IMG/VR virus record: IMGVR_UViG_3300042515_001753
Span: 169,887 to 233,886 of that record
Reading direction: 5' to 3' (one strand)
Length of the DNA: 64,000 nucleotides
Part shown: positions 15,858-64,000 of the stretch, one piece after another
How the letters are laid out: each line of letters starts with the position of its first letter
Position numbering within the stretch: the first letter of the stretch is position 1
Translations under genes and position numbers: made by a program
The notes under the pieces: model-generated
Told to the model about the DNA's origin: nothing
Databases searched by the model: none
What the model saw: the letters and a program-made list of their open reading frames with translations, nothing else

Positions 15858-16571
15858 TTATTTTAACCATTTACGAATAGAATTATCACTAACTCCATAT
15901 TTTTTACCTACAGCAAGATAAGAACTTTCTTTTACTTCTTGTAATAATTGTTCTTTAGAAGGTCTTTCAACTTTTCTTTGGGATTTTGAATAGCAACTAT
16001 TACAAAGACCAGTTTTGCAGTTTGTTTTCAATTCAACCCCACAAGAAGAACATTTATGAATTTTTTTGGTTAGTATTGTTTGGATTTTATTTTTTATTGT
16101 TTGTGAGTTTTTATTTTTCTTATTTTTACCACGATATGTTGGAGTTTTAGCGTGACAATTTGGGCATAAGATTTTTAAATTTTCTAATATATTGTTATAA
16201 TGGTCTCCATCAATATGATCTAATTCTAAAGGTATTGGTTCTTCTAACCATTCACTCAATCCGCAGCATTCACATCTATGATTCTTTAATCCCTCTATAA
16301 TTAATCTTTTTCGCAATTTGTTAGAATTGTACTCATAATTCTTAACAAGGATTTCACTTAATGGTGTTGTATTAAACTTATGAGTTTTTCCCTTTAGATG
16401 TCCTTGACCTGTAAAATGTGAAGTGTCTATTCCATAAAGTTTTTCAAATTTTTTAAATACTCTATAGTTTCCACCTCTTGGAGATAATCCAAGTTTTGTA
16501 AGTGCTTGTGCTATGGAATAACTTTCTTCTACTGCTTTTTTAAATTCTTCTATGCTATATGAATGTCTCAT
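15858..16571 (-). CDS. Free-standing HNH homing endonuclease with zinc-finger and C-terminal HTH-like segments
   Basis: CECC...LELDHIDGDHYNNILENLKILCPNCH (HNH core); second CxxC...CxxC; C-terminal YLAVGKKYGVSDNSIRKW helix-turn-helix-like segment. Confidence 0.9.
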   Translation of the reverse strand: MRHSYSIEEFKKAVEESYSIAQALTKLGLSPRGGNYRVFKKFEKLYGIDTSHFTGQGHLKGKTHKFNTTPLSEILVKNYEYNSNKLRKRLIIEGLKNHRCECCGLSEWLEEPIPLELDHIDGDHYNNILENLKILCPNCHAKTPTYRGKNKKNKNSQTIKNKIQTILTKKIHKCSSCGVELKTNCKTGLCNSCYSKSQRKVERPSKEQLLQEVKESSYLAVGKKYGVSDNSIRKWLK

Positions 16572-16614
16572 ACTGGTAAACTTATTGTATAGTTATTTAT
16601 ATAAGTTTACCAGT
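16572..16614 (-). promoter_or_regulatory. Perfect 14-bp hairpin enclosing late promoter TATAAATA and abutting the HNH start codon
   Basis: ACTGGTAAACTTAT (16572-16585) and ATAAGTTTACCAGT (16601-16614) are exact reverse complements; TATTTATA at 16594-16601; ATG at 16571-16569. Confidence 0.85.
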
Positions 16615-16617
16615 TCA

Positions 16618-16888
16618 TACCCGTGAGTGGATTCGAACCACCGCTTGAGAGATTTTCTTACCACTATAGTTTTCACTACCCTTTCGGTTTGTGGTCTGGA
16701 CTATACCTTCATCATACCTTTCGGTTTAGATGTTCCCCGTCTAGTCTCTACACCTTCATCTTACGATGCTTGGCTCGGTATTGCCATTTTACAGGTTTCA
16801 CCGAATTTGAGGAATTGCACTCATAAGGTTTCCCAAATGAGGCTCAATTTTCATAAGTCTCTTGCCTCTTCCGCTGGGCTACACGGGC
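16618..16888 (-). tRNA. trnL: tRNA-Leu(UAA), split by a group I intron (exon 1 16888-16855, exon 2 16656-16618)
   Basis: Joined exons GCCCGTGTAGCCCAGCGGAAGAGGCAAGAGACTT|AAAATCTCTCAAGCGGTGGTTCGAATCCACTCACGGGTA fold into a cloverleaf with stem AGAGA/TCTCT, loop CT-TAA-AA and T-loop TTCGAAT. CCA is not encoded. Confidence 0.9.
16657..16854 (-). ncRNA. Group I self-splicing intron (IC3-like, trnL type), 198 nt, no ORF
   Basis: 5' exon ends in U and intron ends in G; IGS ATTGAG; P element AAATTCGGTGAAA, Q AATACCGAGC, R GTAGAGACTAGA, S AAGGTATAGTCC; P3 TTCCTC/GGGGAA; P7 GACTA/TAGTC; GNRA-capped P2, P6a, P8 and P9 stems. Confidence 0.92.
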
Positions 16889-16902: not shown

Positions 16903-16931
16903 ATTATAACTCAAAGAGTCCTAATAGTCAA
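16903..16931 (-). promoter_or_regulatory. Sigma70-type promoter TTGACT-17bp-TATAAT directly upstream of tRNA-Leu
   Basis: Plus strand ATTATA 16903-16908 and AGTCAA 16926-16931. Confidence 0.75.
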
Positions 16932-17035: not shown

Positions 17036-17123
17036 TACGAGTGCCTGGATTCGAACCAGGTCAAAGCCGCTAATCTGGCGGAAAGGCGTTATAAGTGCCC
17101 TCTGACTACCAAGTCTCACTCGC
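17036..17123 (-). tRNA. tRNA-Ile(UAU)-like, with long variable arm and very small D arm
   Basis: GCGAGTG/CACTCGT acceptor stem, GACT-TGGT-AGTC D hairpin, CT-TAT-AA loop, CCGC..GCGG variable stem, CCTGG-TTCGAAT-CCAGG T arm. Confidence 0.7.
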
Positions 17124-17171: not shown

Positions 17172-17354
17172 TCAACAACCTTCTTCGTGGTCGGTGTGTA
17201 TTCGTATGAGGTCGTCTGCTTCTTTGTATTGTCTATAAGGAATCATCATAGCATCTCCGTGTTCGCTAGTAACAATAAAAGACTCTCCATTTTCCACTCT
17301 TTCTAGTAGATTATCAAAGTCTTCTTGAAATTCTTCTACCGTAAACTTTTCCAT
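17172..17354 (-). CDS. Phd/YefM antitoxin-like small protein
   Basis: MEKFTVEEFQEDFDNLLERVENGESFIVT..G.AMMIP resembles the Phd/YefM N-terminal pattern. Confidence 0.6.
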   Translation of the reverse strand: MEKFTVEEFQEDFDNLLERVENGESFIVTSEHGDAMMIPYRQYKEADDLIRIHTDHEEGC

Positions 17355-17357
17355 TTA

Positions 17358-17543
17358 TCAAAGAGGATTTGAGTATGCAAGACAATCATCACTTACCTGA
17401 GCACGAACCACTTCCAGTACATTCATAAACTGGTCTGGAGTTTCACAATTCACAACTCGTTCACCACCCTCACTCGAATACAGATAGAACTTACGAGCAA
17501 GCGTATCGACAACACAACGGGTCAGGGTCTCTTCGGCAGGCAT
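17358..17543 (-). CDS. Small hypothetical protein
   Basis: 61-aa ORF directly after a consensus promoter. Confidence 0.7.
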   Translation of the reverse strand: MPAEETLTRCVVDTLARKFYLYSSEGGERVVNCETPDQFMNVLEVVRAQVSDDCLAYSNPL

Positions 17544-63068: not shown

Positions 63069-63242
63069 TTAAACAATAACCCAACGAGCACCAGTATTTA
63101 TAGTGACTGTGACACCACTATTTATAGTTGTAGGACCTATTGTCATCCAATTATAGGTTGTAGTGAGAGTTTGATTGGCATCAATTGCAGTACTACAACC
63201 AACAAAAGCTCCTCCATTAGCTCCTATTACTACTGATGACAT
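63069..63242 (-). CDS. 57-aa small tail-associated protein
   Basis: Not in the track. Hand translation MSSVIGANGGAFVGCSTAIDANQTLTTTYNWMTIGPTTINSGVTVTINTGARWVIV*. Confidence 0.65.
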   Translation of the reverse strand: MSSVVIGANGGAFVGCSTAIDANQTLTTTYNWMTIGPTTINSGVTVTINTGARWVIV

Positions 63243-63248
63243 AATTCA

Positions 63249-64000
63249 TTAAGTTGATTTGTTTCTATTTATAATGCTGTATAAATTTTGAATTTGAACT
63301 TGTTGTTCTTTAATTGCTTCTATGAGTAATCCAACAAGATTTCCATAAGCAACTGATTTGTATCCATTACTTTCTATAACGAGGTCTGGATATACTGTTT
63401 CCAACTCTTGTGCAATCAAACCTATGGTGTGAACGTTAGTATCAATACGATCATATTCTACACCTCTAAGATTAATAACTTTTTCAAGTGCATTTTCAAT
63501 TGTATGAATATTAGTTTTTAGTCTTTCATCAGAGTTTGCAGTTATTGATCCACCAACTGTTAAGTCACCAGTGCTTGCATTAAATGTAAATGCCGTTGCT
63601 GTAGTTCTTACACTTGCGGTTTGGTTTGATCCTGCAGCAGCAACAAATACTGGATAAAATGTCGCATTTGTTGTTGTGTCTGTAGCATTAATAGTTGTTG
63701 ATGGTCCTGCCGATCCTTGAAGACCTTGAGTTCCTTGTGAACCTACCGTACCTTGTGAACCTACTGTACCTTGTGTCCCCTGAAGACCTTGACGACCTTG
63801 AAGACCTTGAAGACCTTGAGTTCCTTGTGAACCAACTGTACCTTGTGAACCTACTGTACCTTGTGAACCTACTGTACCTTGTGAACCTACCGTACCTTGA
63901 GTCCCCTGAAGACCCTGACGACCTTGAAGACCTTGAAGACCTTGAAGACCTTGAGTTCCTTGTGAACCTACCGTACCTTGTGAACCTACTGTACCTTGTG
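63249..64000 (-). CDS. C-terminal part of a second collagen-like tail fibre with peptidase S74-like chaperone (start outside window)
   Basis: QGTVGSQG / QGLQG repeats at ~63710-64000; ANSDERLKTNI ... AYGNLVGLLIEAIKEQQ; TAA at 63251-63249. Confidence 0.85.
   Translation of the reverse strand, partial: QGTVGSQGTVGSQGTQGLQGLQGLQGRQGLQGTQGTVGSQGTVGSQGTVGSQGTVGSQGTQGLQGLQGRQGLQGTQGTVGSQGTVGSQGTQGLQGSAGPSTTINATDTTTNATFYPVFVAAAGSNQTASVRTTATAFTFNASTGDLTVGGSITANSDERLKTNIHTIENALEKVINLRGVEYDRIDTNVHTIGLIAQELETVYPDLVIESNGYKSVAYGNLVGLLIEAIKEQQVQIQNLYSIINRNKST

What the first reader, a model, noticed from the sequence alone, without database searches (positions are those of the whole stretch)
16569..16614. 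Hairpin-over-late-promoter switch that gates HNH translation
A perfect 14-bp inverted repeat ends at the base immediately before the HNH ATG, and TATAAATA sits at the loop. Early read-through RNA from the tRNA promoter would fold the hairpin and bury the initiation region. Late RNA starting in or just after the loop would lack the 5' arm and be translatable. This matches the known control of T4 I-TevI and lysozyme e, and supports the HNH being a functional, toxic, late-expressed enzyme. The hairpin starts 3 nt after the tRNA discriminator, so it could also guide tRNA 3' processing.
Basis: partly seen in the sequence, partly recalled or inferred. Interest (0 to 1): 0.7.

Follow-up and report, generated by a model that had tools for sequence, protein, structure and literature searches.

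The report
Hairpin-gated late switch on phage HNH
A homing-endonuclease gene lodged behind a tRNA gene in a T4-like cyanophage carries a hairpin that buries its start site in read-through RNA and holds a late promoter in its loop, a known T4-style trick for making such nucleases only late in infection.

Summary
On the minus strand, a perfect 14-bp stem (16614-16601 / 16585-16572, 15-nt loop) ends one base before the HNH ATG (16571). It starts 3 nt after the discriminator of an intron-split tRNA(UAA). TATAAATA (16601-16594) fills the 5' side of the loop.

- TATAAATA behaves as a real late promoter in this 234-kb T4-like cyanophage. 21 of its 30 copies lie 18-37 nt before a start codon, and a gp55 homologue is present.
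- A near-consensus sigma-70 promoter sits just upstream of the tRNA, with no terminator before the HNH gene.
- Opening the start region costs about 17-18 kcal/mol in read-through RNA and about 4.5 kcal/mol in RNA started at the predicted late +1.
- The hairpin travels with the HNH gene, not with the tRNA.
- Close relatives keep a 10-bp basal stem, with a few compensatory changes.
- Across 67 independent relatives, start-occluding helices of 10 bp or more occur in 33%, against about 4% in controls.

No transcription start or translation data exist. The logic is already established for T4 I-TevI, gene e, segB and Aeh1 mobE, so this is a new member of a known kind. The most interesting by-product is that the tRNA carries a minimal group I intron of the cyanobacterial tRNA-Leu type.

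The parts
16903..16931 (-). Sigma-70-like promoter (TTGACT, 17 nt, TATAAT) just upstream of tRNA exon 1. It is the presumed source of early read-through RNA.
   Evidence: 11 of 12 consensus matches. A near-identical element (TTGACC, 17 nt, TATAAT) sits before the tRNA-Leu of S-SRM01. Its activity is inferred.
16855..16888 (-). tRNA(UAA) exon 1: acceptor, D arm and anticodon stem, up to U34.
   Evidence: Splice junctions come from the Rfam P1 U-G pair. The spliced sequence is called tRNA-Leu(taa), 73 nt, by ARAGORN.
16657..16854 (-). 198-nt ORF-less group I intron inserted between U34 and A35 of the anticodon.
   Evidence: RF00028, 64.4 bits, E 1.9e-15. It aligns with cyanobacterial tRNA-Leu(UAA) introns at the same insertion site and shares their core blocks.
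16618..16656 (-). tRNA(UAA) exon 2, ending in discriminator A at 16618. No CCA is encoded.
16601..16614 (-). 5' arm of the hairpin. It is present only in RNA started upstream.
16594..16601 (-). TATAAATA, the T4-type late promoter core, in the 5' part of the loop.
   Evidence: It is the top 8-mer in the -45..-10 windows of the genome's ORFs, 21 of its 30 copies lie there, and it ends 22 nt before the ATG.
16586..16600 (-). 15-nt loop. The predicted late +1 is near 16588, six nt after TATAAATA.
   Evidence: The geometry is inferred from T4 late promoters (established knowledge). The start was not mapped.
16572..16585 (-). 3' arm of the hairpin, covering positions -14 to -1 of the HNH initiation region.
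   Evidence: Opening costs 17-18 kcal/mol in read-through RNA and about 4.5 kcal/mol in the predicted late RNA.
15858..16571 (-). Free-standing HNH homing-endonuclease gene (237 aa).
   Evidence: phrog_10822, E 5e-56, full length. Invariant C100, C103, H119, N127, N131, C136 and C139, plus a conserved C-terminal block with a weak, sub-threshold Pfam HTH_23 match. dN/dS 0.10-0.15.

Best explanation
This is the portable expression-control module of a free-standing HNH homing-endonuclease cassette. The cassette has settled directly behind a strongly transcribed phage tRNA gene.

Proposed mechanism:
1. Host RNA polymerase starts at the sigma-70-like promoter in front of tRNA(UAA). It runs through the tRNA and its intron into the HNH gene.
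2. In that RNA the 14-bp hairpin forms and occupies positions -14 to -1 of an SD-less initiation region. The 30S subunit then has no single-stranded landing site, and the nuclease is not made.
3. After replication begins, gp55-directed polymerase starts about 6 nt downstream of the TATAAATA in the loop, near 16588.
4. That late RNA lacks the 5' arm, cannot form the hairpin, and is translated from a 17-nt unstructured leader like those of the phage's other late genes.

Shown by computation: the hairpin and its stability; the promoter-like behaviour of TATAAATA in this genome; the gp55 homologue; the upstream promoter-like site and the absence of a terminator; conservation of the arrangement; an intact nuclease gene under purifying selection.

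Inferred: the two transcription starts, the timing, and the effect on translation.
For: - Structure: 14 of 14 bp, -19.3 kcal/mol, z = -4.7. It is the longest start-occluding helix of 318 ORFs.
- Accessibility: opening -18..+12 costs 17-18 kcal/mol in RNA from the tRNA end or exon 2, and 4.7 kcal/mol in RNA starting at 16587-16589.
- Late promoter: 28 copies of TATAAATA on the gene strand against 2 on the other. 21 of 30 copies fall in the -45..-10 windows, which are 2.4% of the sequence, making it the top 8-mer there. Spacing to the ATG is 18-37 nt with a median of 24.5; for the HNH it is 22. A gp55 homologue scores E 4.9e-14. NATAAATA late promoters and g55/g33/g45 are reported for cyanomyoviruses (PMC2984593).
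- Read-through: promoter-like site TTGACT-17-TATAAT at 16931-16903, and no terminator-like site between it and the HNH gene. One metatranscriptome contig spans 16405-16685, which is weak evidence because it may be DNA.
- The module belongs to the HNH cassette: relatives with 76-96% identical HNH keep hairpin, TATAAATA and ATG behind tRNA-Leu bodies of different sequence, with both short and long variable arms.
- Close relatives: 13 distinct hairpins keep the 10-bp basal stem. Position 5 shows A-U, G-C and G-U; position 3 shows U-A, C-G, U-G and C-A.
- Family-wide: of 67 independent upstream sequences, 33% have a helix of 10 bp or more over the start. The figure is 3.6% for shuffles and 4.3% for neighbouring genes (Fisher p = 3e-8).
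- Convergence: an unrelated HNH in S-SRM01, inserted after a different tRNA, is also preceded by a hairpin with TATAAATA in its loop.
- Leader type: only 2 of 21 late-promoter genes have an SD core, so an SD-less short leader is normal here.
- Precedent: I-TevI/II/III, segB, Aeh1 mobE, and genes e and soc (PMC2988022, PMC3014915, PMC2330249), plus marine metagenomic homing-endonuclease genes with TATAAATA-bearing hairpins (PMC2677866).
Against: - There is no experimental start site, timing or translation measurement. The RNA-library contigs give no 5' ends.
- Covariation among the nine close relatives first aligned is not significant on its own: 2 pairs with double changes, and 44-213 of 500 shuffles do as well.
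- The window's perfect 14-bp stem is the exception. Relatives have 10 bp, a mismatch, then 3 bp.
- The AUG itself is not in the stem, and there is no SD to sequester, so the degree of repression is uncertain.
- In S-SRM01 the analogous hairpin ends 14 nt before the ATG and would not cover the start.
- One close relative (L005/L087) keeps the hairpin but has lost the TATAAATA.
- About half of the family clusters show no helix of 8 bp or more at the assigned start.
Confidence: 0.72

Rival explanations
1. The hairpin mainly serves the tRNA. It would act as a 3'-processing guide, an exonuclease stop, or a folding insulator that keeps downstream mRNA from mispairing with the tRNA and intron precursor. 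Any effect on HNH translation would be incidental.
For: The hairpin starts 3 nt after the discriminator. The tRNA has no encoded CCA and needs 3' processing. Most family members lie within 120 nt of a same-strand tRNA end. In S-SRM01 the hairpin also abuts a tRNA 3' end.
Against: The hairpin co-varies with the HNH cassette, not with the tRNA. The same hairpin follows tRNA-Leu bodies of different sequence. The tRNA-Leu(UAA) genes of S-SRM01 and S-SKS1, which have no HNH downstream, have no such hairpin. The distance from the tRNA end to the HNH start ranges from 30 to over 100 nt across the family. The 3' arm is positioned relative to the ATG.
Confidence: 0.1
2. The inverted repeat works in DNA, as a palindromic operator flanking the late promoter. 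The nuclease itself or another dimeric protein would bind it, giving autorepression like the I-TevI operator.
For: The arms bracket TATAAATA symmetrically. T4 intron endonucleases repress their own late promoters through overlapping operators (PMC2988022). The HNH protein has an invariant C-terminal block with a weak helix-turn-helix match.
Against: Across the family that invariant C-terminal block stays unchanged, while the stem sequences differ completely and only their complementarity is kept. Close relatives have about twice as many G-U pairs on the mRNA strand as C-A mismatches, 14 against 7. The I-TevI operator resembles its homing site and is not a palindrome (PMC2988022).
Confidence: 0.07
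3. The hairpin is a terminator or attenuator that ends tRNA transcription, or a chance or relic palindrome without function.
For: The stem-loop lies directly after a stable-RNA gene.
Against: The stem is AT-rich and is not followed by a T run; the scan reports no terminator there. The genome's evident terminators are GC stems with T7-8 tracts abutting late promoters. Chance is excluded by the z-score, by its rank in the genome and by its recurrence in relatives.
Confidence: 0.04

Closest known systems
T4 I-TevI (td intron) and T4 gene e (lysozyme) late-promoter/hairpin translational control
   Same: A stable hairpin covers the initiation region in early or middle read-through RNA. A TATAAATA late promoter sits so that late RNA lacks the 5' strand of the hairpin. 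A gp55-type late sigma is present (PMC2988022, PMC3014915).
   Different: Here there is no Shine-Dalgarno sequence to sequester; the stem covers -14 to -1 and leaves the AUG just outside. The gene is free-standing behind a tRNA, not inside an intron. The host is a cyanobacterium. Nothing has been measured.
T4 segB (GIY-YIG homing endonuclease in the T4 tRNA gene cluster)
   Same: A homing endonuclease sits inside a phage tRNA cluster and is co-transcribed with tRNA precursors. Its initiation region is predicted to be occluded by a hairpin of about -20 kcal/mol (PMC2330249).
   Different: segB is GIY-YIG, not HNH. The original segB paper found no promoter close to the gene, whereas here TATAAATA lies in the loop. 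SegB is shown to cut tRNA T-loop DNA; the target of this HNH is unknown.
Aeromonas phage Aeh1 mobE (free-standing HNH)
   Same: It is a free-standing HNH homing endonuclease whose RBS is sequestered by an RNA hairpin, with a late promoter that frees it (PMC2988022, citing Gibb and Edgell 2007, 2009).
   Different: mobE is inserted within a ribonucleotide reductase gene, not behind a tRNA, and its regulation has been tested experimentally.
Hairpins with TATAAATA upstream of free-standing endonuclease genes in marine 'fractured gene' loci (Dassa et al. 2009)
   Same: These are metagenomic, cyanophage-like loci. 15 of 16 endonuclease 5' UTRs carry hairpins, and 10 of them contain TATAAATA (PMC2677866).
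   Different: Those endonucleases are Vsr-like or GIY-YIG and split protein genes carrying inteins. This one is HNH and sits next to an intron-bearing tRNA.
Cyanophage S-PM2 psbA intron plus free-standing F-CphI (collaborative homing)
   Same: [quoted passage not shown]
   Different: The host gene here is a tRNA, not psbA. The endonuclease family differs. Cleavage at the intron insertion site has not been tested here.

Membership tests
T4-type late-promoter / initiation-region hairpin switch | A stable RNA helix covers the SD and/or start region in transcripts started upstream. | tested here: met
   A 14-bp stem covers -14 to -1. Opening costs 17-18 kcal/mol. The AUG lies just outside the stem and there is no SD.
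T4-type late-promoter / initiation-region hairpin switch | A late promoter is placed so that late transcripts lack the 5' strand of the helix. | tested here: met
   TATAAATA is at 16601-16594. T4 geometry predicts +1 near 16588, in the loop. RNA from there opens for about 4.5 kcal/mol. The start is predicted, not mapped.
T4-type late-promoter / initiation-region hairpin switch | The phage uses gp55-type late transcription from TATAAATA. | tested here: met
   A gp55 homologue scores E 4.9e-14. 21 of 30 TATAAATA copies lie 18-37 nt before ORF starts.
T4-type late-promoter / initiation-region hairpin switch | Early or middle transcription reads into the gene. | tested here: inconclusive
   There is a promoter-like site at 16931-16903 and no terminator-like site before the gene. 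One RNA-library contig bridges 16405-16685 but could be DNA.
T4-type late-promoter / initiation-region hairpin switch | Translation is repressed on long RNA and allowed on late RNA. | not testable with these tools
   This needs reporter, toeprint or time-course protein data.
Free-standing HNH homing endonuclease (phrog_10822) | An HNH (beta-beta-alpha-metal) catalytic core with zinc-binding cysteines. | tested here: met
   phrog_10822, E 5e-56, full length. C100, C103, H119, N127, N131, C136 and C139 are invariant in 22 relatives. Pfam HNH scores only 15.6 bits, below its cutoff.
Free-standing HNH homing endonuclease (phrog_10822) | Sporadic, cassette-like distribution among otherwise syntenic genomes. 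| tested here: met
   The gene is absent from the same site in S-SKS1. S-SRM01 carries an unrelated HNH at another site in the same tRNA cluster. A relative's contig replaces 1001 nt here with 244 nt, leaving no room for the gene.
Free-standing HNH homing endonuclease (phrog_10822) | Site-specific cleavage of the endonuclease-lacking allele, and preferential inheritance. | not testable with these tools
   This needs a cleavage assay and co-infection crosses.
Intrinsic (rho-independent) terminator | A GC-rich stem followed by a U tract. | tested here: not met
   The stem has 4 G-C pairs out of 14. It is followed by AUGAGAC. The terminator scan does not report it.
Group I intron of the bacterial tRNA (tRNA-Leu UAA) type | A group I core, insertion between U34 and A35 of the anticodon, and exons that join into a tRNA. 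| tested here: met
   RF00028, 64.4 bits. The spliced product is called tRNA(taa). It aligns with cyanobacterial tRNA-Leu introns at the same junctions and shares their core blocks, with about 70% identity over aligned columns. Self-splicing was not tested.

The most novel reading that the evidence does not exclude
The HNH cassette and the ORF-less minimal group I intron in the phage tRNA(UAA) may form a collaborative-homing pair. The nuclease would cut intron-less tRNA-Leu(UAA) alleles, or neighbouring tRNA-cluster DNA, of competing cyanophages, while the intron protects the carrier.

The promoter-inside-a-hairpin module would then be a family-wide adaptation that lets phrog_10822 nucleases live inside heavily transcribed tRNA arrays of very different phages. 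Some of these seem to use other promoter types in the loop.

Cyanophages would also be mobile carriers of the 'ancient' cyanobacterial tRNA-Leu intron.
Probability: 0.3. Interest if true: 0.6.

Novelty: new member of a known kind. Interest (0 to 1): 0.35.

Why it matters
As a regulatory device it adds little new principle. It shows that the T4 solution for keeping a homing nuclease silent until late also operates, in predicted form, in freshwater T4-like cyanophages with SD-less leaders. It also recurs across a large tRNA-associated HNH family.

It is useful for annotation in three ways:
- It marks the 5' boundary of a mobile cassette.
- It predicts a late gene.
- It explains why a nuclease gene can be tolerated directly behind a strong tRNA promoter.

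The neighbouring intron-split tRNA(UAA) is the more interesting lead. It bears on how the classical tRNA-Leu intron moves between genomes.

Tried and rejected
- Covariation on nine close relatives: too little divergence. It gave 2 double changes and no significance against shuffles, so I relied on independent family-wide recurrence instead.
- Metatranscriptome contigs from four RNA runs: they are undirected assembled contigs with no 5'-end information. They showed only one contig bridging the intron 3' end, exon 2, the hairpin and the HNH 5' part, together with HNH-less and intron-less relatives. They are not evidence for or against a late start.
- Pfam on the HNH protein: nothing above threshold. 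PHROGs gave the clear family.
- The only Rfam hit on the hairpin itself was a plant microRNA model at E 0.5, rejected as a chance match to any long hairpin.
- The genome search 'relatives' is not available for a virus record. I used one pattern scan of genome contigs instead.
- The Aeh1 mobE hairpin paper (PMC2655525) is not held. I cite it only through the review.
- Terminator and chance readings were considered and rejected.
- I ran no structure prediction, complex prediction or large protein database search. None would bear on the RNA switch.

Full report
**Context.** The window is the last 64 kb of a single-contig, 233,886-bp virus genome. Runs that hold it come from lake-water metagenomes. 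Its nearest cultured relatives at this locus are the T4-like cyanophages S-SRM01 (Kyanoviridae) and S-SKS1. Nearly all genes lie on the minus strand: 291 of 318 crude ORF calls.

The local gene order on the minus strand, 5' to 3', is as follows:
- a Phd-like small ORF (17354-17172)
- an 88-nt tRNA-like gene with a long variable arm (17123-17036)
- tRNA-Met (17006-16932)
- a tRNA with anticodon UAA split by a group I intron (16888-16618)
- the hairpin (16614-16572)
- the HNH ORF (16571-15858, 237 aa)
- a 102-aa ORF
- a 1853-aa tail-fibre gene

**1. The observation.**
- The arms 16614-16601 and 16585-16572 are perfectly complementary over 14 nt, with a 15-nt loop.
- The 3' arm ends at 16572 and the ATG is 16571-16569.
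- The discriminator A of the tRNA is 16618, followed by three spacer bases.
- TATAAATA is 16601-16594 on the minus strand. That is the last base of the 5' arm plus the first seven loop bases.
- The RNA folds at -19.3 kcal/mol, z = -4.7, with none of 200 shuffles as stable.
- It is the longest perfect short-range inverted repeat in the window.
- It is the longest helix lying over a start codon among all 318 ORFs of the genome.

This is why ARAGORN does not call the tRNA. Once the intron is removed, ARAGORN calls a 73-nt tRNA(UAA).

**2. Is TATAAATA a late promoter in this phage?** In the window alone the motif is not enriched: 4 copies against 6.3 expected. The whole genome settles the matter.
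- There are 28 copies on the gene-bearing strand and 2 on the other.
- 21 of the 30 copies fall in the -45..-10 windows upstream of ORF starts, which make up 2.4% of the two-strand sequence. This makes TATAAATA the most frequent 8-mer there.
- The distance from the motif to the ATG is 18-37 nt, with a median of 24.5. The HNH copy is at 22.
- A homologue of the T4 late sigma factor gp55 is encoded at genome position 77818-78090 (E 4.9e-14).
- This agrees with the literature: all cyanomyoviruses carry g55, g33 and g45 and use NATAAATA late promoters (PMC2984593).

By T4 geometry the late start should lie about six bases after the motif, near 16588. That is inside the loop, two to three bases before the 3' arm. 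This start is inferred and was not mapped.

**3. Is there read-through from upstream?** A near-consensus sigma-70-type promoter (TTGACT, 17 nt, TATAAT; 11 of 12) lies at 16931-16903, a few bases before tRNA exon 1. No terminator-like site lies between it and the HNH gene. A near-identical promoter-like element precedes the tRNA-Leu of S-SRM01. The hairpin itself is AT-rich and has no U tract, so it is not a terminator. One contig from an RNA library spans 16405-16685, covering the intron 3' end, exon 2, the hairpin and the HNH 5' part. It is compatible with read-through but could be contaminating DNA.

**4. What does the hairpin do to the initiation region?**
- Making -18..+12 single-stranded costs 17-18 kcal/mol in RNA that begins at the tRNA 3' end or at exon 2.
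- The cost is 4.7 kcal/mol in RNA that begins at 16587-16589.
- There is no Shine-Dalgarno sequence. That is normal here: only 25% of ORFs, and 2 of the 21 late-promoter genes, have an SD core.
- The likely effect is therefore loss of the single-stranded landing zone, not SD sequestration. The AUG itself sits just outside the stem.

**5. Comparative evidence.** Scans of viral and metagenome contigs gave 159 loci with relatives of the HNH protein.

(a) Close relatives, with 62-96% identical protein:
- All place the gene about 85-97 nt after a homologous intron in a tRNA-Leu(UAA).
- Nearly all keep hairpin, TATAAATA and ATG in register.
- The tRNA bodies differ. Some have a short variable arm and some a long one, and their acceptor stems differ. 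The cassette that starts at the hairpin stays alike. So the hairpin belongs to the HNH cassette, not to the tRNA.
- Among 13 distinct in-register hairpins the 10-bp basal stem next to the ATG is kept. Position 5 shows A-U, G-C and G-U. Position 3 shows U-A, C-G, U-G and C-A.
- The formal covariation test on nine sequences is not significant, because they are too similar.
- The window's fully perfect stem is the exception. The others have a mismatch at pair 11.

(b) Distant relatives, with 30-50% identical protein, come from very different phages, including contigs of 300-550 kb:
- After clustering the upstream regions into 67 independent groups, 33% have an uninterrupted helix of 10 bp or more over the start. 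The figure is 3.6% for dinucleotide shuffles and 4.3% for 161 neighbouring gene starts (Fisher p = 3e-8). At 8 bp or more the figures are 46%, 16% and 14%.
- The stems share no sequence. Only their complementarity and their position at the ATG recur.
- In several groups the 5' arm overlaps a TTCGA-type element and the loop holds a TATTTATAAT-like element. This would be the same logic with a different promoter type. It is my reading of the sequences and was not tested.

(c) S-SRM01 carries an unrelated HNH gene (best pairwise BLASTP E = 0.097), inserted after a different tRNA of the same cluster. It too is preceded by a hairpin (9 bp) with TATAAATA in the loop. There the 3' arm ends 14 nt before the ATG.

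(d) The tRNA-Leu(UAA) genes of S-SRM01 and S-SKS1 have no HNH downstream and have no such hairpin.

**6. The nuclease.**
- The ORF matches phrog_10822 (HNH endonuclease) over its full length (E 5e-56).
- It keeps every invariant residue of the family: C100, C103, H119, N127, N131, C136 and C139.
- It also keeps an invariant C-terminal block with a weak, sub-threshold Pfam HTH_23 match, probably a DNA-binding helix-turn-helix.
- Against six relatives of equal length, dN/dS is 0.10-0.15.
- The gene is therefore maintained as a working protein. Toxicity was not tested.
- 61 of the 67 family groups have a tRNA gene within 1.5 kb, and 36 have a same-strand tRNA ending within 120 nt upstream.
- This is a tRNA-cluster-resident nuclease family, the same niche as T4 SegB, which recognises tRNA T-loop DNA (PMC2330249).

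**7. [quoted passage not shown] It is predicted for segB (PMC2988022, PMC3014915, PMC2330249). Hairpins carrying TATAAATA upstream of free-standing endonuclease genes have also been described in marine, cyanophage-like metagenomic loci (PMC2677866). This case differs only in detail: an HNH behind an intron-bearing tRNA, an SD-less leader, and a freshwater cyanophage. I file it as a new member of a known kind.

**8. Rivals.**
- A role in tRNA 3' processing or precursor folding cannot be excluded as a secondary effect. It is disfavoured because the hairpin travels with the HNH gene and is absent from HNH-less tRNA-Leu genes.
- A DNA operator is disfavoured because the stems differ in sequence across a family whose invariant C-terminal block, the putative DNA-binding part, does not change. 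G-U pairs on the mRNA strand also outnumber C-A mismatches about two to one in close relatives.
- A terminator and chance are rejected.

**9. Side result.** The intron is a minimal (198-nt) relative of the bacterial tRNA introns.
- A 22-nt core motif from it recurs in many cyanobacterial, alphaproteobacterial, betaproteobacterial and acidobacterial genomes.
- An alignment with cyanobacterial tRNA-Leu(UAA) genes shows the same insertion point and shared core blocks, with the peripheral extensions missing.
- All close HNH relatives sit next to this intron, and some distant ones sit next to related introns.
- One relative's contig seems to have the intron without the HNH gene.
- This suggests, but does not show, a collaborative-homing relationship like psbA/F-CphI in cyanophage S-PM2 (PMC3984707, PMC6083498).
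- My two full-text searches for a group I intron in a phage tRNA gene returned no such report among the listed papers. That does not prove novelty.

**Verdict.** I put confidence in the mechanism at about 0.7 and interest at about 0.35.

Noticed in passing
window 16618-16888 (-); intron 16657-16854: A tRNA with anticodon UAA is split between U34 and A35 by a 198-nt ORF-less group I intron. The intron aligns with cyanobacterial tRNA-Leu(UAA) introns but lacks their peripheral extensions. ARAGORN misses the gene. My two full-text searches listed no report of such an intron in a phage tRNA.
   Followed up: partly
window 16618-16888 compared with L003:1340-1500 and L013:1190-1500: The spliced tRNA(UAA) here, like the one in S-SRM01, has a short 5-nt variable loop, unlike bacterial tRNA-Leu. 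Relatives L003 and L013 carry the same intron and HNH cassette in a tRNA(UAA) with a long variable arm. The amino-acid identity of the short form is unclear.
   Followed up: no
window 17036-17123 (-): An 88-nt tRNA-like gene has a long variable arm and a CUUAUAA anticodon loop. ARAGORN calls it tRNA-Ile(tat) in S-SRM01 and S-SKS1, but neither ARAGORN nor Rfam detects it in the window. Its anticodon stem differs from the S-SRM01 stem by paired changes. Metatranscriptome contigs end exactly at 17036/17037 and give it the highest depth of the region.
   Followed up: partly
L001:3897-3940 (-), Synechococcus phage S-SRM01: An unrelated HNH gene, inserted between tRNA-Ile and tRNA-Met, is also preceded by a hairpin (9 bp) with TATAAATA in the loop. 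Its annotated 3' end overlaps tRNA-Met by 10 nt.
   Followed up: partly
loci L003-L161 (relatives of the HNH protein): The phrog_10822 HNH family is tied to tRNA arrays. 61 of 67 independent loci have a tRNA within 1.5 kb, usually on the same strand and just upstream. Several sit on contigs of 300-550 kb.
   Followed up: partly
L081, L027 and L098 (upstream of the HNH gene); L047, L022, L139, L118 and L068 (downstream, L068 on the opposite strand): Distant HNH relatives (34-43% identity) also lie next to sequences similar to the 3' two-thirds of this group I intron. The nuclease-intron association therefore recurs beyond the close clade.
   Followed up: no
genome positions 42843, 44039, 50727 and 74502 (outside the window; G000:C1): Many late promoters directly abut a GC-rich stem plus a T7-8 tract, so terminator and TATAAATA are fused. 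This suggests tightly packed late transcription units.
   Followed up: no
genome ORF starts 44012 and 140202 (G000:C1, minus strand; outside the window): Two other genes (370 aa and 253 aa) have 13-bp and 10-bp helices over their starts, with an ATAAATA motif in or beside the 5' arm or loop. They may be further cases of the same switch.
   Followed up: no
window 63095-63273 (-): Three TATAAATA copies lie within 180 nt. Two of them fall inside a called ORF, just upstream of the next gene start.
   Followed up: no
window 16651-16872 compared with phage records: The intron shows about 75% DNA similarity to a stretch inside the annotated capsid gene of Pelagibacter phage HTVC120P and to unannotated huge-phage records (LR756501/03). 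This suggests related introns in protein-coding genes of other aquatic phages.
   Followed up: no
window 17172-17354 (-) and 17358-17543 (-): A small Phd/YefM-like ORF scores below the Pfam cutoff (25 bits). Its upstream neighbour on the same strand is a DUF7294 ORF, and a perfect-consensus sigma-70 promoter lies at 17598-17570. I noticed no toxin partner.
   Followed up: no
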